Virus record (IMG/VR): IMGVR_UViG_3300025121_000282
Coordinates: 186,001-250,000 of that record
Length of the DNA: 64,000 bases
Reading direction: 5' to 3' (one strand)
Within the stretch, counting starts at the first letter, position 1. Every line of letters begins with the position of its first letter. The notes beneath the pieces are model-generated. The model did not search any database, was not told the DNA's origin, and worked only from the letters and a program-made list of their open reading frames with translations. Below are positions 5,298 to 49,492 of this stretch, piece by piece. The translations under genes and the position numbers were made by a program.

Positions 5298-5385
5298 GCG
5301 AGAGTGGCGAAAAACAGGAAGACGCCCTAGCTTCAGGTGCTAGGGGCTGCAAGGCACTCAGGTTCGAATCCTGACTCTCGTACCA
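5298..5385 (+). tRNA. trnL: tRNA-Leu (CAG)
   Basis: Acceptor GCGAGAG/CTCTCGT+ACCA, anticodon arm CTAGC-TTCAGGT-GCTAG, long variable arm, T arm TCAGG-TTCGAAT-CCTGA; own motif at 5261. Confidence 0.93.
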
Positions 5386-27578: not shown

Positions 27579-28128
27579 CTCAGTTAGCAAAGAATGCCTA
27601 CATTGCAAGGTTTCGTTTGTCCCACCGTACAGAAATAGACAAAAGAAATTTTGTTGTGTAGAGCACTCTCGTCTGTGGCAGAGCCAAACCCTGACTAACC
27701 AGAACACCGTCTCACGCGACGGGAAGTGTCGAAAGTGTGCTATCACCATAGACACCAACTTTCCGGGCAAAAATAGAGGTGGGCGTAGTAGACTATGTGC
27801 CAAGTGTTTCAGCAACTACACCAGTGAGCGTTATCTTTCCAGAAAACTGGCTTTAATTGAGTTTTTGGGCGGAAAATGTCATGACTATGGGCAGCAGTAC
27901 CATTATGCTGCCATGCAGTTTCATCACACGGACCCCAACAGCAAAGAGTTTGACTGGAGCCGTTTAAGACGACAGTCTCTCGCCACTGTGCTAAATGAAA
28001 TTAGCAAGTGTGCTTTGCTCTGCAATAATTGCCATGCAATAAGGCACTGTCAATCCCAGATAAGTGACGAGTCTCTAAGAATGAAAAATAACTTCCTCGC
28101 TGACTTAAGATCGGCGCACGCCTTTTAA
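27565..28128 (+). CDS. HNH homing endonuclease-like protein
   Basis: GGKC...QFHHTDPNSKEF...KCALLCNNCHAIRH, N-terminal Zn/DNA-binding Cys motifs; AT-richer than neighbours. Confidence 0.85.
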   Translation: MRDTNSVSKECLHCKVSFVPPYRNRQKKFCCVEHSRLWQSQTLTNQNTVSRDGKCRKCAITIDTNFPGKNRGGRSRLCAKCFSNYTSERYLSRKLALIEFLGGKCHDYGQQYHYAAMQFHHTDPNSKEFDWSRLRRQSLATVLNEISKCALLCNNCHAIRHCQSQISDESLRMKNNFLADLRSAHAF

Positions 28129-32796: not shown

Positions 32797-33684
32797 ATGC
32801 TTAAAATAATTCTAGACATGGAGACTCAGGACCCGGATGATGTGCTGACCCTGGCTATGCTTGCGGACCATCCACAAGTAGACCTGCTTGCTGTCACCGT
32901 CACCCCCGGAACTCCACACCAAATAGGTGTGGTTTCTCATGTGTTGTGGTTACTGGAAAAAGAAAGTGTACCAGTTGGTAGCTTCAATATCAACCACACA
33001 AAAGGCAGAGGGACTCCACAGGAACATTATGTGACCTGTGTCTCCGACTGGCATTATAAAGCTTTTGGCCCCATGGAACCAATTTCGAAGACTGAAGTCG
33101 GGTGGCAGTTGTTGGAGCGGACTTTAGGCCCTGATACAACCTTAGTAACGGGTGCTCCGCTCAAAAATCCGGGTGCTCTTCTTGAGAATACTGCAAATTC
33201 TAACTTGGGACGCATTTTTGTCCAGGGTGGTTTTGCTGGGCAGGGAGTGGTTCCGGAGTGCGACCAATTGCCAAAATTCAAAGGTTTGGTTTCATGCCCC
33301 ACCTTCAATCTGAACGGCGACCCCAAGGCTGCACTGAGAGTTCTGGAATCTAAAAGGTTCTCTGAACGTAAAATGGTGTCTAAAAATGTTTGCCATGGGG
33401 TTACTTACACCCAAGAGTTCCACGACAAGTTAAGAACCATGGAACGTAGCCGTCAAGGTTTGCGACTGATCACCCGTGTCATGAATTCCAAGATCGGTAA
33501 AGCACTACACGACCCTTTGACAGCTTGCTGTGCCATCGAGCCCAAAATAGGGAAATGGGCTCCTGTTATTGTGTTTAGGACTGTCCATGATGAGTGGGGG
33601 AGTGAGCTAAGCCCAGAATCCACTACTCAAATCATAACATCTTACGACCCCAATTTGTTTTTCCGTACCTTCAGTGCAACCTAA
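32797..33684 (+). CDS. inosine-uridine nucleoside hydrolase (IUNH)-like protein
   Basis: N-terminal DMETQDPDD Asp motif, GAPLKN, FNLNGDP, LHDPL. Confidence 0.8.
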   Translation: MLKIILDMETQDPDDVLTLAMLADHPQVDLLAVTVTPGTPHQIGVVSHVLWLLEKESVPVGSFNINHTKGRGTPQEHYVTCVSDWHYKAFGPMEPISKTEVGWQLLERTLGPDTTLVTGAPLKNPGALLENTANSNLGRIFVQGGFAGQGVVPECDQLPKFKGLVSCPTFNLNGDPKAALRVLESKRFSERKMVSKNVCHGVTYTQEFHDKLRTMERSRQGLRLITRVMNSKIGKALHDPLTACCAIEPKIGKWAPVIVFRTVHDEWGSELSPESTTQIITSYDPNLFFRTFSAT

Positions 33685-33708: not shown

Positions 33709-34959
33709 GTGTCTTACTCAATTCACGAAGTCCTGGGGATTCCTGTTATTTTCAATACCACAGGCACACCGATGGTATCTGTAAGGGTCATTGTGAATGC
33801 GGGTAGTACCCATGAGGACGTCCCTGGTACTGCTCACTTTTTGGAGCACATGTTTTTCAAGGGTTCCGAAAAGAGAGGTTATGAAGAGATAAACCGTATT
33901 GCGGCCAGAATGGGCAATACGAATGCGTACACGTGCCCCAACCGAACAGTGTTCACCATAGATACCGTAGAAGGAAAAGTCTTGGAGGCTCTAGAGCTTC
34001 TGCTTGAAATGTTGTTTACACCCAAACTCGATCCTGCTGAGATAGAAAAAGAGCGGAGTGTAATTTTAGAAGAGTGGAGGGCAGGCGAGGACGACCCGGT
34101 GGGCTTTATGATAGAAAGCGCTGTGAACTTGGTGTCCCCCAATCGTAATGGCCGACCAGTTATTGGAACCGAAGACTCAATAAAAAGTATTACTGCAAAT
34201 ACCCTCAGGGATTTCAGGTCCAAAAACTATACCAGACAAAATTTGGCTATTGCTATTATTGGTGGAACCACAATTGATTCTGAACCAATAGACAGCGCAA
34301 TTGCAGGGTATGGGTGGTACCTTATCGACTCTAGCAAAAATGATATAGTTACACTAGAAAAGGACTTCAAACCCTGGGAAGAAGATCACAGCAGAGCCAT
34401 TACCCACGTGGCCGGTCAAGCTGGTATATGTCTATTTACACCCTGGGTCTCAGCAGCCGAGGACCAAAACCTCGCTAGCCATGTTTTGGCAAATATGCTC
34501 GGCGAGGGCATGCACAGCCTTCTATTTAATAGACTTCGAGAACAAAGTGGTCTCTGTTATGCCACGGGATGTTCACCCATGGGCTCGTGGGACGACCAGT
34601 CTCTTTTGTGTTATGCTCTTTTGAGTCCCGAGAATGTGATTCGGGGTGTAACAGAAATGAAAGCAGTTTTAGAAGAGCTTGCCCTAGGCCAGTTTGACGA
34701 CGACCTTTTAGAAATTAGTCTAGCTAACAGTTTGTTTGCCAGTGCATCCCGGTCCGAAACCGCTTCGGGGTGGGCTCAAACTTTTGTTGATGATTACTTC
34801 TACTTCGAAAAGGTAGGACTCATACCCGAAATCTTCCATGGGTATGACTTCATTACAAGTAGGCTAGGCTCCATGGACATGGTCCAACTGCGGGAAGAGA
34901 TTATTGTGATAGCCAAAAAGATGGTAACCCAGTCTTTGACAGTTGTTATGAATGGGTAA
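33709..34959 (+). CDS. M16 family zinc peptidase (insulinase-like)
   Basis: GTAHFLEHMFFKGS (HxxEH), NAYT, distal E...E, C-terminal SLLFNRLREQSGLCY. Confidence 0.92.
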   Translation: MSYSIHEVLGIPVIFNTTGTPMVSVRVIVNAGSTHEDVPGTAHFLEHMFFKGSEKRGYEEINRIAARMGNTNAYTCPNRTVFTIDTVEGKVLEALELLLEMLFTPKLDPAEIEKERSVILEEWRAGEDDPVGFMIESAVNLVSPNRNGRPVIGTEDSIKSITANTLRDFRSKNYTRQNLAIAIIGGTTIDSEPIDSAIAGYGWYLIDSSKNDIVTLEKDFKPWEEDHSRAITHVAGQAGICLFTPWVSAAEDQNLASHVLANMLGEGMHSLLFNRLREQSGLCYATGCSPMGSWDDQSLLCYALLSPENVIRGVTEMKAVLEELALGQFDDDLLEISLANSLFASASRSETASGWAQTFVDDYFYFEKVGLIPEIFHGYDFITSRLGSMDMVQLREEIIVIAKKMVTQSLTVVMNG

Positions 34960-41066: not shown

Positions 41067-41750
41067 ATGCTTTTAGTAAAGCCAACAGCCATAATTGAGG
41101 CTGGGACATTTGGCAATGAGGCCTTGTCTATCATAGAACGTGCAGGTAGGACATGTTACAAAAGCGAGCCTAAGGGAGAGTCAGCTGCTTTTGTAAGACG
41201 CATACTCGATAGCCAGCACGAATCTGTGATAGAGCATGCAGGCTTCTCTGTCAGATTCGTTGTGGACCGGGGTGTTTCTCACGAATTGGTACGCCATCGT
41301 TTGGCAGCATTCAGTCAAGAGTCTACACGGTATGTGAACTACAGCCGTAAGGGTGGTGGACACTGTCAGTTCATTATACCCAGCTGGCTGAGCGCAGAAT
41401 TGTTTGAGGGTGAAAACACAGAAAAGGATTTTTATACTCCCGCTCAAAATGGCTCATACAGCCTTTCGGCAGTACAGTGGCTTACTGCTATGCAAAGTGC
41501 AGAGAATGCCTACAGGGACCTGTGTGCTCTAGGTTGGACGGCTCAACAGGCCCGAAGTGTGTTGCCAAATAGTGCAAAAACTGAATTGGTTATGACAGCC
41601 AATTACAGAGAATGGCGCCATGTATTCAAACTACGGACATCAAAACAGGCTCACCCTCAGATGAGAGAGGTTATGGCCCCACTTCTCGACCAGATTAAAA
41701 CACTGGTTCCGGTTGTGTTTGATGACATAAACTTGCACAAGACTGTATAA
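41067..41750 (+). CDS. thyX: FAD-dependent thymidylate synthase
   Basis: HESVIEH, SHELVRHRLAAFSQESTRY, ARSVLPN, AHPQMRE. Confidence 0.97.
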   Translation: MLLVKPTAIIEAGTFGNEALSIIERAGRTCYKSEPKGESAAFVRRILDSQHESVIEHAGFSVRFVVDRGVSHELVRHRLAAFSQESTRYVNYSRKGGGHCQFIIPSWLSAELFEGENTEKDFYTPAQNGSYSLSAVQWLTAMQSAENAYRDLCALGWTAQQARSVLPNSAKTELVMTANYREWRHVFKLRTSKQAHPQMREVMAPLLDQIKTLVPVVFDDINLHKTV

Positions 41751-43167: not shown

Positions 43168-44436
43168 ATGATTGATAGATACTCTTATCCAGAAATGGTT
43201 AAGGTGTGGTCGGATGAGCATAAATACGACCTATGGTTTCAACTAGAAACTAAGGTATGCAGGGCCATGGAAAAGCTAGGAACTGTTCCACCTGGAACTG
43301 CGTCTGCCATAGAGAGTAACACTAAAATAAATATAAAAAGAATTTTAGAACTAGAGTCTATAGTGAGGCACGACGTCATAGCATTTTTAAGCCACATAGA
43401 AGAACAAAACGCAGACCATTCCCGTTGGTTGCATTTAGGGCTTACGAGTTCAGACATTACTGACACAACATTCTCAATTTTATTGGACGAGGCACTGTCT
43501 TTAATTGAAGGTCAGGTGTGTGAGCTATTGGACGTAATCAGGGAATTGGCTTATAAGCATAAATTTACTATGGTTATTGGACGAAGCCACGGGATGCACG
43601 CAGAACCAACAACATTCGGACTTATAATGGCTTCTTTTTATTCTGAATTTAAAAGAAATCAGGCAAGACTAAATCAGGCAAAAGAGGGTATAAACGTATG
43701 TAAGTTCAGTGGCCCTGTTGGCAACTTTTCCAGTATAGACCCGCTAGTAGAAGTTGAAATAAGTCTCAGGTCTGGAATGAGCCCAGAGCCGGCTGCATCC
43801 CAGATTATAAATAGAGATAGACACGCTTATTATTTTAGTGTACTTGCTTTAGTTGGTACAAGCATTGAGAGACTCGCTTTACAAATAAGACATTGGCAGA
43901 GAAGTGAAGTAGGGGAGGTAGAGGAACCTTTTTCGCCTCGTCAAAAGGGTTCCTCGGCAATGCCACACAAACACAACCCTATTATTTCTGAGAACCTGAC
44001 TGGACTAGCTAGAATGCTCAGAGGGTATGCCCAATCGGCCATGGAAAATGTAGCCCTGTGGCACGAAAGAGACATCAGTCACTCTAGTGTAGAAAGATTT
44101 ATTGGGCCAGACTCAACGTCTATTTTGTATTATATGCTGAAAAAGACTGTGTTTTTATTAAAAAATATGAGAGTAAACTCTGCCAAAATGGCGGAGAATT
44201 TGAATAAGTCTATGGACTACATCCACAGCCAAAAGTTGTTACTCGCACTTACAACAGGTGGAACACCAAGACAAGAGGCGTACACCCACATACAAAACGC
44301 CCTGAAGTCTGGGGAGAGCCTGGAAGAATGGTCTAAACGACAAATTGCAACCAGTGTGTTGGTTGATAAAGTATTCAATGGGCACCAAGACTACACCAAG
44401 CACGTGGACTACATCTTTGAACGTACATTTGTGTAA
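43168..44436 (+). CDS. purB: adenylosuccinate lyase
   Basis: MIDRY...W, HDVIAF, GLTSSD, GRSHGMHAEPTTFG, signature GSSAMPHKHNP, LWHERDISHSSVER. Confidence 0.97.
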   Translation: MIDRYSYPEMVKVWSDEHKYDLWFQLETKVCRAMEKLGTVPPGTASAIESNTKINIKRILELESIVRHDVIAFLSHIEEQNADHSRWLHLGLTSSDITDTTFSILLDEALSLIEGQVCELLDVIRELAYKHKFTMVIGRSHGMHAEPTTFGLIMASFYSEFKRNQARLNQAKEGINVCKFSGPVGNFSSIDPLVEVEISLRSGMSPEPAASQIINRDRHAYYFSVLALVGTSIERLALQIRHWQRSEVGEVEEPFSPRQKGSSAMPHKHNPIISENLTGLARMLRGYAQSAMENVALWHERDISHSSVERFIGPDSTSILYYMLKKTVFLLKNMRVNSAKMAENLNKSMDYIHSQKLLLALTTGGTPRQEAYTHIQNALKSGESLEEWSKRQIATSVLVDKVFNGHQDYTKHVDYIFERTFV

Positions 44437-44457
44437 AGTATTGGTACCAGGAAACAA

Positions 44458-45159
44458 ATGATAAAAAACACCACCATTACTACAACTGGAAGAATGATGA
44501 ACCTGGAAACAGGCTCTGAGATTTCGGTTGTAGACTTTGTGTCGTTATTTACCCAGCGTAGGTTTAGTACTGTTTCAGTACCGTGTGCCATTGACATCTC
44601 TACCCACCTCATAATTTGTGGAATGGTAGGGGCCAGATATTACAGATGGTTTAAAGACAGAGTGGACCCATGCCCGAGGCATGACTTTGTACTGGCGTGT
44701 TACCAGCATGACTTGCCGGAAACATTTTTAAGTGACATAGTTGTTCCGGTTAAAAATGTTGTTGGAAGAGAAGTAATAAATAAGATAGAAGATACTGCCT
44801 ACGCCGGTATCATGGGTTGGGCTTATGGCGAGGACACTCCCGTCGACCCACCACACGAAGCCCTAAAAGATGCAGACACCCTGGCCATGATAGCAGAGTT
44901 GTCGTGGTATCTAGAGTGCTGGCCTAGGCATAAAGGCTTAAGGACAGTACTGGTTCAGTCCTATGATTATCTTTCCAGACGGAATTTGATACCATTCATA
45001 CTCTCCAAAGAGGGTATGTTCATTAGAAACCCGATAGTTATGCATTATTTTTATTCTATGGACGCCAATTGTCTCAGAGACTTGGGGATATCCAATTATG
45101 ATGTTCCCAACGAAACATACTTCGATGAATGTGCATTTGAATCAAAGGACACCAAATAA
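44458..45159 (+). CDS. HD-domain nucleotide phosphohydrolase (YfbR/DatZ-like)
   Basis: RRF...H...HDLPETFLSDI..PVK...DADT. Confidence 0.75.
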   Translation: MIKNTTITTTGRMMNLETGSEISVVDFVSLFTQRRFSTVSVPCAIDISTHLIICGMVGARYYRWFKDRVDPCPRHDFVLACYQHDLPETFLSDIVVPVKNVVGREVINKIEDTAYAGIMGWAYGEDTPVDPPHEALKDADTLAMIAELSWYLECWPRHKGLRTVLVQSYDYLSRRNLIPFILSKEGMFIRNPIVMHYFYSMDANCLRDLGISNYDVPNETYFDECAFESKDTK

Positions 45160-46785
45160 ATGGACCAAACTAAAACCATAACCCACGGCACCATTGTTCG
45201 CAAGAAAATGGTACGAGGGGCTCAGATCTTAGCCAGAACTGTGGGAGTCACACTTGGCCCCAAGGGTAGAAATGTCATGATTGACCGGGCCATGCTCGGT
45301 CCTGTAATAACCAAGGATGGTGTCACAGTAGCGAAAGAGGTGATGCTCTCTGACCCGTTAGAGGACATGGGTGCCACTATCGTGCGTCAGGCGTCGGAAA
45401 AGACCTCCGACGACGCAGGAGACGGCACGACGACGGCTACTGTAATAGCGGGCAGGCTGATTACTGAGGCAAACAAACTGGTAGAGAGCGGGATGTCGCC
45501 TATAAACTTGCACAAAGGCATGCTTATAGCACAAAGATACATAACTGACCAGATTGGCCAAACTGCCACAAAAATATCCTCTGTTGAAGAAATAAAGGCA
45601 GTTGCTACACTGTCAGCCAATGGCGACACTACTATAGGTGACACAGTTTCTGAAGCCATGGACGCCGTTGGTAAAGACGGTGTCATAATGGTCGAAGAGT
45701 CCAACACCGTAAAAGATGTGCTTGAACTTATTGAGGGAGCCCGGTACGAAAAAGGCTGGAAGGACCAAGCCTTTGGCGGTATTTCGGGCACAGCAACACT
45801 GGAAAATCCGTATGTCTTAATTATAGGCGAAAGAGTAGAAGCAATCAATGCTTTTGTAGACACTATTCATTTTATTTTGGAGTCTGGCAGGCCCTTGTTG
45901 TTCATTGCAAATGATATAGCGTTGGACGCCTTGTCCACGTTTATCCTTAACCACAAAAAAGAACAACTCATTTGTTGTTGTGTTCCTGGTCCCTCATTTG
46001 GTCAGAAAATGAGGGATATGATGGAGGACTTGGCTATTTTTACTGGTGCAACGCTTATTGCAACAAATAAGGGCATCAAACCGTCCGACATCAAACCGGA
46101 ACACCTAGGAACATGCGACAAAGCCGTAATAAATAAAACTCACACTACTATATTTGGTGGTAAGGGTTCGAATGAGAACATTACGGCCAGAATCACATCG
46201 CTGCGCTCTCAAAGGGACAGTGCACTATCTCTTTTTGACAAAGACAGGTATCAAGAGAGAATCGGTATGCTGTCTGGCGGTATTGGTGTGATAAAGATAG
46301 GGGAAATGACAGAAGCAGCCCTGAGAGAGCGGAAGGCCCGTGTAGAGGACGCAATTGGGGCCACAAGGTCTGCCATAAAGCATGGCGTAGTAGCTGGTGG
46401 TGGCTCAATTTTGGCTAAAATCTCCGCAAGCATGGGTGACTTGGATGACTATGGGGAACATGACGTAGAAGAGTGTGCCGGGTGGAATGCTGTAAGAACA
46501 GCAATACAAGAACCTATACGACTCATCGCTAAAAATTGCGGAGTAAATGCAGATACTGTTTATAGGGTAGTGTCTAGCTCTGTAGACCCCAAATTTGGTT
46601 GGAACGCATCAACAGAGGAATACGGGGACTTGTTTATCGACGGGGTTATTGACCCATCAGCTGTAACTCAAAATGTTGTGGTTAATGCCATTTCTGCTGT
46701 CCATGGGATTTTGACATCTGAATGCGCTATTGTGTACACCCAGTATGTTAAAGATCAGGACTTGTCCGGAGGGCTCCATGTCTGA
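45160..46785 (+). CDS. groEL: phage chaperonin GroEL
   Basis: TLGPKGRNV, TKDGVTVAKE, AGDGTTTATV, LSGGIGVIKIG, RVEDAIGATR..GVVAGGG; no GGM tail. Confidence 0.97.
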   Translation: MDQTKTITHGTIVRKKMVRGAQILARTVGVTLGPKGRNVMIDRAMLGPVITKDGVTVAKEVMLSDPLEDMGATIVRQASEKTSDDAGDGTTTATVIAGRLITEANKLVESGMSPINLHKGMLIAQRYITDQIGQTATKISSVEEIKAVATLSANGDTTIGDTVSEAMDAVGKDGVIMVEESNTVKDVLELIEGARYEKGWKDQAFGGISGTATLENPYVLIIGERVEAINAFVDTIHFILESGRPLLFIANDIALDALSTFILNHKKEQLICCCVPGPSFGQKMRDMMEDLAIFTGATLIATNKGIKPSDIKPEHLGTCDKAVINKTHTTIFGGKGSNENITARITSLRSQRDSALSLFDKDRYQERIGMLSGGIGVIKIGEMTEAALRERKARVEDAIGATRSAIKHGVVAGGGSILAKISASMGDLDDYGEHDVEECAGWNAVRTAIQEPIRLIAKNCGVNADTVYRVVSSSVDPKFGWNASTEEYGDLFIDGVIDPSAVTQNVVVNAISAVHGILTSECAIVYTQYVKDQDLSGGLHV

Positions 46786-48440: not shown

Positions 48441-48698
48441 TTACTGACAGCTTTCTATCTTATCACAAGACAAAATAGAAGAAACACACTTGGGCTTTAA
48501 GTTGTGCCCATTAGTCAAAGACTGCCGACAAAATACTTCACAAGTAGTGCCGTCCTCCAGTGGTTTCCCTTCCTCGCACCCTAATTTTACTAAATTTTGA
48601 CACGCAAGCGGACAGTCTTCTGCTCCACCCACTTCTTGCACTACATATGCTGGAACACAACCTGGAATAAATAAGAAAACTGCTGAAAGCATCTTCAT
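48441..48698 (-). CDS. Cys-rich lipoprotein
   Basis: MKMLSAVFLFIPGC lipobox-like signal; 8 further Cys; ATGA coupling to the C1 peptidase. Confidence 0.75.
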   Translation of the reverse strand: MKMLSAVFLFIPGCVPAYVVQEVGGAEDCPLACQNLVKLGCEEGKPLEDGTTCEVFCRQSLTNGHNLKPKCVSSILSCDKIESCQ

Positions 48699-49492
48699 TT
48701 TTTGTTTCCTAGTGCAAAGGGGTCCCAAGGAGCCGAAACTACAAAGGGGTCGTCTGTTAGGGTAAAGTCCGCAATCACATCCGGGTCCATAAAATAGTAT
48801 CCGTCGTACCCCCACTTGGTGCCCCAGGAATTTTCTCCTATAAAGTTCGTCCCATCCCACCCCACCAAAACTGTAATATGTCCACCTTCAGTAGTGCTCG
48901 GCTTTCCAATTACCATGTCCGGTTTTTTACCATAACCGTCCCAGTTGTTGCCAATTAAGGTTCCCACTACAACAGGGCAATTGTTGCGCAGGGCTTTAAT
49001 GCATGCATCCACCCTGTAAGACCCAATTCCTCGAATTCTATAGTATGAATCAATTTTGTTTACATAGGCTCTGCGCATGGCTGCCCACGATGGGGCAACT
49101 GAGACCTTACTTAAATCAAATGGCCACACTACATCTTCGCATACACCAAATCTTTTTAAGGCGTCACATGCTGCACTGATGGTAGTCCCGTTGTCAACCC
49201 TGCCACCATCAGGTCCACCTCTCAATTCTCTGGCTAGGTAATACAAAGCTAACACAGACAGGTCTATGTGCTTTGATTTTCCATACGTAAGTATTCTTTT
49301 AATTTCCAGGGCTTTAATTACGCCCTGAGCTACACAACTGTTTGACCCTTTTTGGTTGTGTCTGGGCGATGAATAGTCCCTTAGGTCCACCGTCCCCGCA
49401 CCTGAAGTGCCAAGCATGGGAGACAGTCTGTCCTCAAATGACCAATCACCCGGATGCTCACCCTCCCCGGAATAGCCGTACTTAATTACCAC
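48695..49492 (-). CDS. C1 (papain-family) cysteine peptidase
   Basis: VDLR, NQKGSNSCVA (Q...C), GGHITVLVGW, ENSWGTKWGYDGY. Confidence 0.92.
   Translation of the reverse strand: MVIKYGYSGEGEHPGDWSFEDRLSPMLGTSGAGTVDLRDYSSPRHNQKGSNSCVAQGVIKALEIKRILTYGKSKHIDLSVLALYYLARELRGGPDGGRVDNGTTISAACDALKRFGVCEDVVWPFDLSKVSVAPSWAAMRRAYVNKIDSYYRIRGIGSYRVDACIKALRNNCPVVVGTLIGNNWDGYGKKPDMVIGKPSTTEGGHITVLVGWDGTNFIGENSWGTKWGYDGYYFMDPDVIADFTLTDDPFVVSAPWDPFALGNKK

What the first reader, a model, noticed from the sequence alone, without database searches (positions are those of the whole stretch)
43168..45159. Phage purB adjacent to an HD hydrolase: possible modified-purine (dZ-type) pathway
In 2-aminoadenine phages, PurZ makes a succinylated dGMP derivative that PurB converts to dZMP, and the HD enzyme DatZ removes dATP (established; PurB is normally borrowed from the host). 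Here an intact purB is directly followed by an HD nucleotide hydrolase. No purZ/purA, mazZ or dpoZ is in the window, so plain purine supply plus a YfbR-like nucleotidase is equally possible.
Basis: partly seen in the sequence, partly recalled or inferred. Interest (0 to 1): 0.6.

Follow-up and report, generated by a model that had tools for sequence, protein, structure and literature searches.

The report
Jumbo phage 2-aminoadenine pathway genes
A 315-kb groundwater phage carries its own adenylosuccinate lyase next to a divergent HD phosphohydrolase, and 56 kb away an intein-split PurZ-type synthetase, so it probably replaces adenine with 2-aminoadenine (Z) by a variant of the known pathway.

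Summary
Window 43168-44436 (+) encodes a full-length adenylosuccinate lyase that passes NCBI's purB equivalog cut-off. Window 44458-45159 (+), 21 nt downstream, encodes a very rare, divergent HD phosphohydrolase of the YfbR/DatZ/OxsA fold with every catalytic residue.

The window lies in a 314,886-bp virus record, and that genome holds a PurA-family gene (G000:286256-288679, minus strand, outside the window). It is split by a LAGLIDADG intein. Its exteins carry the PurZ hallmarks, and it groups with phiVC8/S-2L PurZ (96/93 support) inside a clade found in phage contigs of 147-436 kb.

In that clade PurB is present in 9 of 24 large contigs. One subclade, which includes this phage, carries YfbR-like HD proteins with an aromatic/Ser-Thr motif reported only from dZ-enriched contigs. 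The other subclade carries NDT-like genes.

No MazZ/DUF550, DatZ ortholog or DpoZ-like polymerase was found. The PurZ model score is below its curated cut-off, and A-containing restriction sites are still avoided.

Best reading, at confidence about 0.55: PurZ plus phage PurB make dZMP, and the HD enzyme removes dA nucleotides. No base chemistry was measured.

The parts
43168..44436 (+). purB: adenylosuccinate lyase, 422 aa. Proposed to cleave fumarate from the PurZ product (N6-succino-2-amino-2'-deoxyadenylate) to give dZMP.
   Evidence: TIGR00928 purB scores 411 bits against a 326-bit cut-off. PDB ASL structures match at about 1e-119 over the full length. Lyase_1 matches at 1e-44. PurB is present in 9 of 24 large PurZ-like-bearing viral contigs. 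Its partner, the PurZ-type gene, lies outside the window at G000:286256-288679 on the minus strand, which would be window coordinate about 100256-102679.
44458..45159 (+). Divergent YfbR-like HD phosphohydrolase, 233 aa. Proposed dA-nucleotide-clearing enzyme (a DatZ analogue, not an ortholog).
   Evidence: Invariant H50, H84-D85, E88, D93, K99 and D140. Profile against PDB: Atu1052 1.8e-6, YfbR 3.4e-6. Fold Z: 11.8 YfbR, 10.2 DatZ. Aligned to DatZ, R35/F36/T38 correspond to R19/W20/I22, and P97/K99/K137 to P79/K81/K116. Only 5 representatives among 1.8 billion proteins.
41067..41750 (+). ThyX thymidylate synthase, in the same co-directional gene string (context: nucleotide supply).
   Evidence: Pfam Thy1 6.6e-49. 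A ThyX gene also lies near the PurZ-like gene in relatives L013, L014 and L024.
32797..33684 (+). Inosine-uridine-type nucleoside hydrolase. Possible helper that would destroy released (deoxy)adenosine. This role is inferred only.
   Evidence: Pfam IU_nuc_hydro 1.6e-17 over the full length. Only weak RihC/RihA matches in NCBIfam.
45160..46785 (+). GroEL-like chaperonin. It starts right at the HD gene's stop and is a conserved neighbour of the HD family. Not part of the pathway.
   Evidence: Pfam Cpn60_TCP1 2.3e-62. A 37%-identical HD homologue (P0006) also sits just upstream of a Cpn60 gene.

Best explanation
This jumbo phage most likely makes 2-aminoadenine (Z) deoxynucleotides by a variant of the known PurZ pathway, with two of the steps encoded in the finding.

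Step 1, inferred from sequence. After its intein splices out, the PurZ-type synthetase at G000:286256-288679 condenses dGMP with aspartate, probably using ATP or dATP rather than GTP.

Step 2. The phage's own PurB (window 43168-44436) removes fumarate to give dZMP. The enzyme's identity is shown. Its use on this substrate is inferred from what host PurB does in known Z phages.

Step 3, inferred. Host kinases make dZTP, and the phage's family-A polymerase incorporates it.

Step 4. The HD enzyme encoded right after purB (44458-45159) lowers the dA nucleotide pool by hydrolysing dATP or dAMP. It would then play the part that DatZ plays in S-2L/phiVC8-type phages. The fold and catalytic residues are shown. 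The substrate is inferred.

No dedicated dGTP-to-dGMP enzyme (MazZ/DUF550) was found, so dGMP would come from host pools or host DNA breakdown.
For: PurZ-type gene.
- It matches PF00709 and is interrupted by an intact intein: Cys1, TxxH, LAGLIDADG_3 at 4.8e-18, an intein C-terminal model over its cut-off, then His-Asn followed by Thr. The insertion sits exactly in the NAGH|T motif.
- The exteins carry Ser at the E. coli PurA Asp13 / S-2L S23 position, the TTVT loop, F295, and Asn in place of the guanine-specific Asp. D-type PurA, PurZ0 and the cellular clade all keep that Asp. The exteins also carry the PurZ-only insertion with Y244 and W252.
- PMC12884076 reports Asp-to-Ser in 100% of 147 phage PurZ-group proteins. 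bioRxiv 10.1101/2025.10.22.683976 states that S14D abolishes selectivity.
- Among PDB sequences the order is phiVC8 PurZ 3.5e-22, S-2L PurZ 4e-19, archaeal PurA 1e-13, E. coli PurA 2e-6.
- NCBIfam's PurZ model is the top model.
- In the careful tree the protein sits in a 9-row large-virus clade (98/98) that joins phiVC8/S-2L PurZ (96/93). This excludes D-type PurA and a cellular Ser/Gly clade (the quick tree agrees).

PurB.
- It passes the equivalog cut-off.
- PurB is found in 9 of 24 large PurZ-like viral contigs, against 41 of 50,697 phage records overall, several of which look like bacterial contamination.
- Other PurZ/PurZ0 phages carry PurB: Archimedes, and a 43-kb contig, G006, with a PurZ0-like gene, an adjacent HD_3 gene and PurB.

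HD protein.
- All DatZ metal-A, metal-B and phosphate-binding residues are present.
- All six PurZ subclade-A contigs with a Pfam HD_3 gene encode a 210-255 aa YfbR-like protein with [YF]20 and [ST]22 at the DatZ W20/I22 positions. The window's protein has F and T there.
- The Y20-T/S22 combination was reported only on dZ-enriched contigs (bioRxiv 10.1101/2025.10.22.683976).
- The window's HD profile hits three of those jumbo HD_3 genes at 1e-4 to 1e-5.

The sister subclade B instead carries NDT-like genes, which lie beside purZ in several of the contigs, and dUTPase genes in three of the four contigs tested. This mirrors the known split between DatZ-type and NDT/Dut-type Z phages.
Against: - No chemistry was measured. 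Nothing here shows Z in the DNA.
- NCBIfam's PurZ model scores 156 bits (140 for the C-extein) against a 300-bit cut-off. Intein-free relatives score 195-229. This is a divergent subfamily whose substrate is untested.
- Tyr298 (phiVC8 numbering), which stacks on the adenine of ATP, is Gln here.
- No MazG, DUF550, DUF5664, NDT or dUTPase was found.
- The genome has a PolA, but it shows no BLAST similarity to either DpoZ type.
- purB and the PurZ-type gene are 56 kb apart.
- The HD family's other members sit in other contexts with no PurB or PurZ in reach: Cpn60; Cpn10 and DnaE; dNK and NUDIX.
- By sequence the family is nearer YfbR and Atu1052 than DatZ. A plain 5'-deoxynucleotidase is not excluded.
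- The genome strongly avoids A-containing palindromes: CTCGAG 0 observed against 65 expected, GGATCC 6 against 37, GAGCTC 2 against 20, GATC at O/E 0.65. BamHI is among the enzymes reported as hindered by dZ. Only about half of tested enzymes are hindered at all, so this argument is weak.
Confidence: 0.55

Rival explanations
1. Plain purine supply. PurB is an auxiliary metabolic gene that boosts AMP/IMP synthesis during infection. The HD protein is a general YfbR-like 5'-deoxynucleotidase for nucleotide salvage. Neither has to do with a modified base.
For: PurB is a textbook ASL. Some viral contigs do pair PurB with a canonical Asp-type PurA: in G009 the two genes overlap, and in L010 they are 1.2 kb apart. 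The HD family is closest in sequence and fold to YfbR. Its relatives sit in salvage-like contexts, for example next to dNK and NUDIX. Restriction-site avoidance persists.
Against: This genome's only PurA-family gene is of the PurZ type, not the PurA type. No other de novo purine gene turned up among the roughly 70 ORFs scanned. A lone PurB without PurA gains little for AMP supply.
Confidence: 0.2
2. The phage does make Z with PurZ and PurB, but the HD protein is unrelated to it. It would be, for example, a housekeeping phosphohydrolase co-transcribed with the chaperonin. Adenine exclusion would then rest on PurZ's own (d)ATP use or on unknown genes.
For: The HD-chaperonin adjacency recurs in a 37%-identical homologue. 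PurB-HD adjacency is seen only in near-identical variants of this phage. In related jumbo contigs the HD_3 gene and purB are tens of kb apart or more.
Against: A YfbR-like HD gene with the [YF]-x-[ST] motif is present in all complete subclade-A PurZ contigs and absent from subclade B, which has NDT instead. That pattern is hard to explain without a link to PurZ.
Confidence: 0.15
3. The divergent PurZ-like subfamily makes a different purine nucleotide than dZMP, for example a ribo- form or another 6-amino product. The end product would be an undescribed modification.
For: The score is below the PurZ model cut-off. The clade has its own insertions of 10-20 residues near the substrate loops, and Y298 is Gln. 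No member of the clade has been assayed, and none is described in the literature searched.
Against: All residues named as contacting the 2-amino group and the base of dGMP are kept. The accessory genes in the clade are the same kinds as in proven Z phages.
Confidence: 0.08

Closest known systems
Z-cluster of cyanophage S-2L and Vibrio phage phiVC8 (purZ-mazZ-datZ, with DpoZ or PrimPol)
   Same: A PurZ-type synthetase with Ser for Asp13, the TTVT loop, loss of the GTP-specific Asp, and tree placement beside these PurZs. A YfbR/HD_3-fold phosphohydrolase with the same metal and phosphate residues as DatZ.
   Different: The genome is 315 kb, against about 40 kb. The genes are scattered (purB and HD at 229-231 kb, the PurZ-type gene at 286-289 kb) rather than in one cluster. 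purZ is split by an intein. There is no MazZ/DUF550 and no DpoZ-like polymerase. The HD protein is not a DatZ ortholog and has F/T at the W20/I22 positions. The phage brings its own PurB.
PurZ0 phages (Gordonia phage Archimedes, Arthrobacter phage Wayne type)
   Same: A phage-encoded PurB-like lyase together with a PurZ-group synthetase. Both lack DatZ and MazZ.
   Different: PurZ0 keeps the GTP-type Asp and lacks the PurZ insertion. Those phages use DutZ and DmtZ (dUTPase-like and NDT-like), which this genome lacks. Archimedes PurB-like is shorter (365 aa) and only 31% identical over 265 residues.
E. coli YfbR 5'-deoxynucleotidase / HDDC2 / OxsA family (Pfam YfbR-like, HD_3)
   Same: Best fold matches (Z 10-12), with the same H...HD...E...D...D spacing and the R-aromatic motif 15 residues before the first His.
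   Different: There is no hit to the Pfam or NCBIfam models of these families. The protein has an extra N-terminal stretch of about 30 residues and a C-terminal tail. Its substrate is unknown.
Canonical PurA + PurB pairs in viral contigs (L010, G009)
   Same: A phage-borne PurB of the same family, 33-46% identical.
   Different: Those contigs carry Asp-type PurA with the GTP motifs (GDxGKG, TTGR, (N/T)K(M/L)D), and their best NCBIfam models are purA. The window's genome carries the PurZ type instead.

Membership tests
PurZ (succino-amino-deoxyadenylate synthase) | Homology to adenylosuccinate synthetase (PF00709) | tested here: met
   PF00709 at 5.7e-17 on the ORF. The genome search scored 46.9 bits, over the cut-off.
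PurZ (succino-amino-deoxyadenylate synthase) | Ser in place of the catalytic Asp13 of E. coli PurA (S-2L S23, phiVC8 S14) | tested here: met
   The motif WGSSGKG is in the N-extein. PMC12884076 reports Ser in 100% of 147 phage PurZ-group proteins.
PurZ (succino-amino-deoxyadenylate synthase) | TTVT loop tip (S-2L T273-T276) in place of PurA's G-x-T-T-G-R | tested here: met
   TTVTKR is present. The D-type rows have G-A/T-T-T-G-R.
PurZ (succino-amino-deoxyadenylate synthase) | ATP/dATP-type donor site: loss of the guanine-specific Asp (S-2L Q308), with F295 and Y298 (phiVC8 numbering) | tested here: inconclusive
   Asn replaces the Asp and F295 is present, as in PurZ proper. PurZ0, the cellular clade and PurA keep the Asp. 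But Y298 is Gln in this protein, although it is Tyr in all its clade mates.
PurZ (succino-amino-deoxyadenylate synthase) | Placement inside the PurZ clade of a PurA-family tree | tested here: met
   In the careful IQ-TREE the 14-row clade with phiVC8 and S-2L PurZ has 96/93 support, and the 9-row large-virus clade has 98/98.
PurZ (succino-amino-deoxyadenylate synthase) | Score over the curated cut-off of NCBIfam NF038379 (300 bits) | tested here: not met
   156.5 bits for the intein-bearing ORF and 140 for the C-extein. It is the top model but below the cut-off. phiVC8 PurZ scores 397. The joined extein was not scored, as it has no reference.
PurZ (succino-amino-deoxyadenylate synthase) | Catalyses dGMP + Asp + (d)ATP to the succinylated intermediate | not testable with these tools
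   Needs an enzyme assay.
PurB adenylosuccinate lyase (TIGR00928) | Equivalog score cut-off and signature loop | tested here: met
   411 bits against a 326.2-bit cut-off. SSAMPHKHNP loop present. Full-length match to solved ASLs at about 1e-119.
DatZ dATP triphosphohydrolase | YfbR-like/HD_3 fold with metal-A (H, HD, D) and metal-B (E, D) ligands and R19, K81, K116 | tested here: met
   H50, H84-D85 and D140; E88 and D93; R35, K99 and K137. Fold Z 10.2 to 6ZPA.
DatZ dATP triphosphohydrolase | W20 and I22 (deoxyribose selection and exclusion of the 2-amino group) | tested here: not met
   F36 and T38 occupy these positions. This resembles the Y20-T/S22 variant reported on dZ-enriched contigs, whose activity is untested.
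DatZ dATP triphosphohydrolase | Orthology or close sequence similarity to known DatZ, and synteny with purZ | tested here: not met
   No tblastn hit with either DatZ. No match in 50,697 phage records. The profile reaches phiVC8 DatZ only at 4.7e-5, and does not reach S-2L DatZ. The gene lies 56 kb from purZ.
DatZ dATP triphosphohydrolase | dATP-specific hydrolysis that spares dZTP | not testable with these tools
   Needs an enzyme assay.
YfbR 5'-deoxynucleotidase (NCBIfam PRK03826; Pfam PF12917/PF13023) | Match to the family models | tested here: not met
   The window protein has no Pfam or NCBIfam hit. A distant family member, P0008, carries weak precomputed YfbR-like/HD_3 hits. The best fold match is YfbR.
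Z-cluster (datZ-mazZ-purZ gene triad) | MazZ or DUF550 (d)GTP diphosphohydrolase present | tested here: not met
   No MazG, DUF550 or DUF5664 match in the genome. The DUF5664 search had no positive control. No tblastn hit with MazZ-1 or MazZ-2.
DpoZ (Z-selective family-A polymerase) | Membership of a DpoZ subfamily | tested here: inconclusive
   A 925-aa PolA exists at G000:49575-52352. It has no BLAST similarity to phiVC8 DpoZ or Archimedes Pol I. No polymerase tree was built.
Intein (class 1, LAGLIDADG) | Cys1, block B TxxH, homing endonuclease domain, C-terminal His-Asn, nucleophile at +1 | tested here: met
   The junctions read NAGH|C ... SHN|T, with TDIH in block B. Intein_splicing, LAGLIDADG_3 and intein_Cterm models match. 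The splice junction restores the conserved NAGHT motif seen in intein-free relatives.

The most novel reading that the evidence does not exclude
A widespread, so far undescribed clade of jumbo phages (contigs of 147-436 kb, several with terminal repeats) replaces adenine by 2-aminoadenine. They would use a distinct PurZ subfamily that is often split by inteins. About a third carry their own PurB. They would use two alternative adenine-exclusion modules: a YfbR-like HD enzyme with a [YF]-x-[ST] motif in one subclade, and an NDT-like enzyme (with dUTPase genes in the contigs tested) in the other. The window's phage would be the extreme case, with a nearly orphan HD enzyme fused into a purB operon and no MazZ or DpoZ.
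Probability: 0.45. Interest if true: 0.75.

Novelty: new variant of a known kind. Interest (0 to 1): 0.6.

Why it matters
Z-DNA has so far been tied to small siphoviruses and podoviruses of roughly 40-70 kb with a compact purZ-mazZ-datZ cluster.

If this reading is right, full adenine replacement also occurs in phages five to ten times larger, with the pathway scattered across the genome. The host-supplied step (PurB) would be internalised. The dATP-clearing step would be done by a lineage of HD enzymes that standard models do not recognise.

That would widen the search space for Z genomes in metagenomes, because a Pfam HD or DatZ search misses this one. It would give new enzymes for making Z-DNA in vitro. 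It would add PurZ to the list of intein-invaded phage nucleotide-metabolism genes.

If the reading is wrong, the locus is an ordinary auxiliary purine gene beside a nucleotidase.

Tried and rejected
- tblastn of phiVC8 and S-2L DatZ, MazZ, DpoZ and PrimPol, and of Archimedes Dut-like proteins, gp51/52 and Pol I, against the genome. Only PurZ and PurB hit.
- Pfam genome scans for MazG, HD, DUF550, DUF5664 and PolB. All were empty, and DUF5664 had no positive control.
- HD protein against phage records, IMG/VR and PDB by sequence. Nothing was found. The word-based homologue search found only two near-identical proteins.
- A second HD candidate (G000:273151-273681). It is a (p)ppGpp/(p)ppApp-hydrolase-like HD_4 protein, not DatZ.
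- The two Mom-family genes that flank purZ were considered as a second adenine-modification step. They match whole-length PHROG 'homing endonuclease/HNH' families that include the Mom-like domain, so selfish elements are the simpler reading. This is not settled.
- Alternative genetic code for the ORF-poor, GC-richer part of the genome. There is no sign of stop-codon reassignment.
- Microcystis phage MaAM05 purB as a jumbo-phage precedent. The surrounding genes (metG, ftsH, proS) look bacterial, so it was set aside.
- PurB tree. It is poorly resolved and pairs the window's PurB only weakly (SH-aLRT 94, quick search) with that of the PurZ0-like contig G006.
- Palindrome avoidance as a proxy for Z. 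The result is ambiguous.
- The joined extein has no reference. It was built only inside scripts, for alignments and trees. No search or fold tool was given it. Searches used the C-extein (P0003:471-807) or the whole ORF by reference.
- No complex prediction was run.
Full report
**Setting.** The window is bases 186001-250000 of a 314,886-bp IMG/VR virus record that CheckV rates as complete. Near-identical contigs come from groundwater metagenomes. The PurZ-type protein is also on record on a contig of 341 kb. From window position 28000 onward, GC drops from about 0.52-0.58 to about 0.42-0.47 and long co-directional genes begin.

**The observation.** ORFs 43168-44436 and 44458-45159 exist as described, on the + strand.
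- Both have plausible ribosome-binding sites.
- They sit in a tight gene string: ThyX (41067-41750), a 138-aa ORF, an amidase_2 protein, purB, the HD gene, then a GroEL-like gene that starts at the HD stop.

**PurB.** The first ORF is an unambiguous adenylosuccinate lyase.
- It scores 411 bits on TIGR00928, whose cut-off is 326.
- It aligns over its full length to the Thermotoga, Bacillus and Staphylococcus structures at E about 1e-119.
- Its signature loop is intact.

**The HD protein.** The second ORF has no hit in Pfam, NCBIfam or PHROGs, none in 50,697 phage records and none in the PDB by single sequence. An exhaustive HMMER scan of 1.8 billion representatives found only five relatives. 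Their alignment keeps H50, H84-D85, E88, D93, K99 and D140 invariant.
- A profile of the family reaches Atu1052 (1.8e-6), YfbR (3.4e-6), HDDC2 and OxsA in the PDB. It reaches phiVC8 DatZ at 4.7e-5 among the loci held.
- The AlphaFold model (pLDDT 67.8, core 75-93) aligns to YfbR at Z 11.8, OxsA 10.9, HDDC2 10.4 and DatZ 10.2. The next fold group scores 6.7 or less.

It is not a member of any curated model and not a DatZ ortholog.

Aligned to DatZ, every residue that PMC8065100 names is matched:
- metal A: H34, H66, D67, D119;
- metal B: E70, D75;
- phosphate contacts: R19, K81, K116;
- also P79.

The exceptions are the two specificity positions. W20 is Phe36 and I22 is Thr38.

**The missing piece.** A genome scan with PF00709 found one at G000:286256-288679 on the minus strand. 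It is an 807-aa ORF with three parts:
- a 45-residue N-extein;
- a 424-residue intein, with Cys1, a TDIH block B, a LAGLIDADG_3 domain and a C-terminal His-Asn;
- a 338-residue C-extein that begins with Thr.

The insertion sits inside the conserved NAGH|T motif, and intein-free relatives read straight through it.

**Is it PurA or PurZ?** Six tests were made.
1. The P-loop reads WGSSGKG, with Ser where PurA has the catalytic Asp. In PMC12884076 all 147 phage PurZ-group proteins have Ser. bioRxiv 10.1101/2025.10.22.683976 states that S14D abolishes selectivity.
2. The aspartate-loop tip is TTVT, as in PurZ.
3. The guanine-specific Asp of PurA's (N/T)KxD-like motif is Asn here, within LNFxN, as in PurZ proper. 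PurZ0, a cellular Ser/Gly clade and D-type PurA all keep the Asp. F295 is present, but Y298 is Gln.
4. The PurZ-only insertion after the conserved RV pair is present, with the Y244 and W252 that ranked top in the metagenomic association study.
5. Among solved structures the order is phiVC8 PurZ, S-2L PurZ, archaeal PurA and PurZ0, then bacterial PurA.
6. In a careful ML tree the protein lies in a 9-row clade of large-virus proteins (98/98) that joins phiVC8/S-2L PurZ (96/93). This excludes D-type PurA and the cellular clade. The position of PurZ0 is unresolved (the quick tree agrees).

Against membership, NCBIfam's PurZ model is the best-scoring model but stays under its 300-bit cut-off. The whole ORF scores 156, the C-extein 140, and intein-free relatives 195-229. 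phiVC8 PurZ scores 397. The protein is therefore best called a divergent PurZ subfamily.

The joined extein has no reference. It was used only inside scripts for alignments and trees. All searches were by reference to the C-extein or to the whole ORF.

**The clade.** Pattern searches found 222 PurZ-like loci in IMG/VR. The 80 best include 23 contigs of 147-436 kb, seven of them with terminal repeats.

Across those 23 contigs plus this genome:
- PurB is present in 9 of 24, and in 4 of the 11 rated at least 90% complete.
- For comparison, PurB matched 41 of 50,697 phage records, several of which look like bacterial contamination.
- A Pfam HD_3 gene is present in six contigs, all in the subclade nearest this phage, which I call subclade A.
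- An NDT-like gene is present in eleven contigs, all in the other subclade, B. It lies beside the PurZ-like gene in several of them. Three of the four subclade-B contigs tested also carry dUTPase genes.

This reproduces, inside one jumbo-phage clade, the known split between DatZ-type and NDT/Dut-type Z phages.

The six subclade-A HD_3 proteins are 210-255 aa. At the DatZ W20/I22 positions they carry R-[YF]-x-[ST]. The association study saw the Y20-T/S22 combination only on dZ-enriched contigs. The window's protein has R-F-S-T, and its profile hits three of those genes at 1e-4 to 1e-5. One subclade-A contig (G026) also has a MazG gene next to its HD_3 gene.

**Other PurB-bearing viral contigs.** They go both ways.
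- Two carry an Asp-type PurA next to PurB (L010, G009), which fits plain adenylate synthesis.
- One 43-kb contig (G006) carries a PurZ0-like gene, an adjacent HD_3 gene and PurB.
- Gordonia phage Archimedes, a PurZ0 phage, has an annotated PurB-like gene.

So a phage-borne PurB is informative only together with the type of PurA-family gene. Here that type is PurZ.

**What is absent.**
- There is no MazG, DUF550, DUF5664, NDT or dUTPase.
- No DatZ, MazZ or DpoZ was found by BLAST.
- The phage has a 925-aa family-A polymerase unlike either DpoZ type at BLAST level. S-2L shows that a selective polymerase is not required.
- purB/HD and purZ are 56 kb apart.
- The HD family's other members lie next to Cpn60, near Cpn10 and DnaE, or next to dNK and NUDIX, with no PurB or PurZ in reach.

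**Indirect test of modification.** The genome has no CTCGAG site at all (0 observed, 65 expected, counting both strands). It also has very few GGATCC and GAGCTC sites, and GATC is at 0.65 of expectation. BamHI is among the enzymes reported as hindered by dZ, but only about 53% of 147 tested enzymes are hindered. I count this as weak evidence against full protection by Z, not as a refutation.

**Verdict.** The two genes are real and correctly named in kind. It is also favoured because YfbR-like HD genes track the PurZ subclade to which this phage belongs.

What remains inferred:
- the substrate of this divergent PurZ;
- the substrate of the HD enzyme;
- the presence of Z in the DNA.

I put 0.55 on the full pathway as stated, 0.2 on plain purine supply, 0.15 on Z without a role for the HD gene, and 0.08 on a different product.

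Noticed in passing
outside the window: G000:286256-288679 (-) = L002:6256-8679 (-): The PurZ-type gene is split by a LAGLIDADG intein inside the NAGH|T motif. About 45 further intein-bearing PurZ-like proteins (740-1212 aa) exist in metagenomes, on contigs up to 383 kb. The longest ones and the partial coverage of others suggest two inteins or a second insertion site. No paper in the library links inteins with adenylosuccinate synthetase in phages.
   Followed up: partly
outside the window: L002:4678-6213 (-) and L002:8682-10385 (-): The only two Mom-family (PF25680) genes of the genome flank the PurZ-type gene on both sides. They are 511 and 567 aa, with NUMOD-like repeats, a Vsr-like nuclease core and a C-terminal Mom-like domain. 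They match whole-length PHROG 'homing endonuclease/HNH' families. Whether they are selfish elements or a second purine-modifying step is open.
   Followed up: partly
outside the window: G000:45576-48407 (+) = L099:5576-8407: A second intein with a LAGLIDADG domain interrupts the DnaB-like helicase, which is 943 aa.
   Followed up: no
outside the window: G000:56357-57910 (+) = L099:16357-17910: A phage-encoded PARP-like protein with WGR, PARP regulatory and PARP catalytic domains, 517 aa.
   Followed up: no
outside the window: G000:272198-273681 (+) = L096:7198-8681: A metallo-beta-lactamase-fold gene is followed by a 176-aa HD_4 protein. Its best matches are (p)ppApp/(p)ppGpp hydrolases, so it is a small alarmone hydrolase rather than a DatZ.
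   Followed up: yes
window 32797-33684 (+): An inosine-uridine-type nucleoside hydrolase, followed by a two-domain M16 peptidase at 33709-34959. The hydrolase could dispose of deoxyadenosine released by a DatZ-like enzyme, but this is a guess.
   Followed up: partly
window 1-28000 (G000:186001-214000) and upstream to about G000:60000: A GC-richer region (0.51-0.59, against about 0.44 elsewhere) with only short ORFs on mixed strands. One tRNA-Leu(CAG) lies at window 5298-5385. Reading any one stop codon through did not give the long frames that a reassigned codon would.
   Followed up: partly
whole genome G000: Extreme avoidance of some 6-bp palindromes: CTCGAG 0 observed against 65 expected, GGATCC 6 against 37, GAGCTC 2 against 20 (both strands counted). 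GATC is at 0.65 of expectation.
   Followed up: partly
loci L029-L061 (GTDB genomes): A well-supported clade (99/96) of short PurA-like proteins in bacterial and archaeal genomes and MAGs has Ser or Gly at the catalytic Asp position but keeps the GTP-type Asp. It includes Binatia, Acidobacteriota, Lacibacter, Halobacteria and Promethearchaeota. Several lie on chromosome-length records of 3.6-5.6 Mb. Their substrate is unknown to me.
   Followed up: partly
IMG/VR contigs G001-G029 (loci L101-L159): Among large PurZ-like-bearing contigs, HD_3 genes (6 contigs) and NDT-like genes (11 contigs) never occur together, and the split follows the two PurZ subclades. G026 also has a MazG gene beside its HD_3 gene.
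   Followed up: partly
L010:9971-13559 and L092 (G009): Some viral contigs carry PurB next to a canonical Asp-type PurA. L010 is from a 244-kb contig that also has a GroEL-like gene 39.5% identical to the window's.
   Followed up: partly
window 48695-49492 (-): A Peptidase_C1 (papain-like) gene lies just before the long minus-strand genes of 1234 and 1146 aa, which I take to be structural. The annotation comes from the near-identical contig L089.
   Followed up: no
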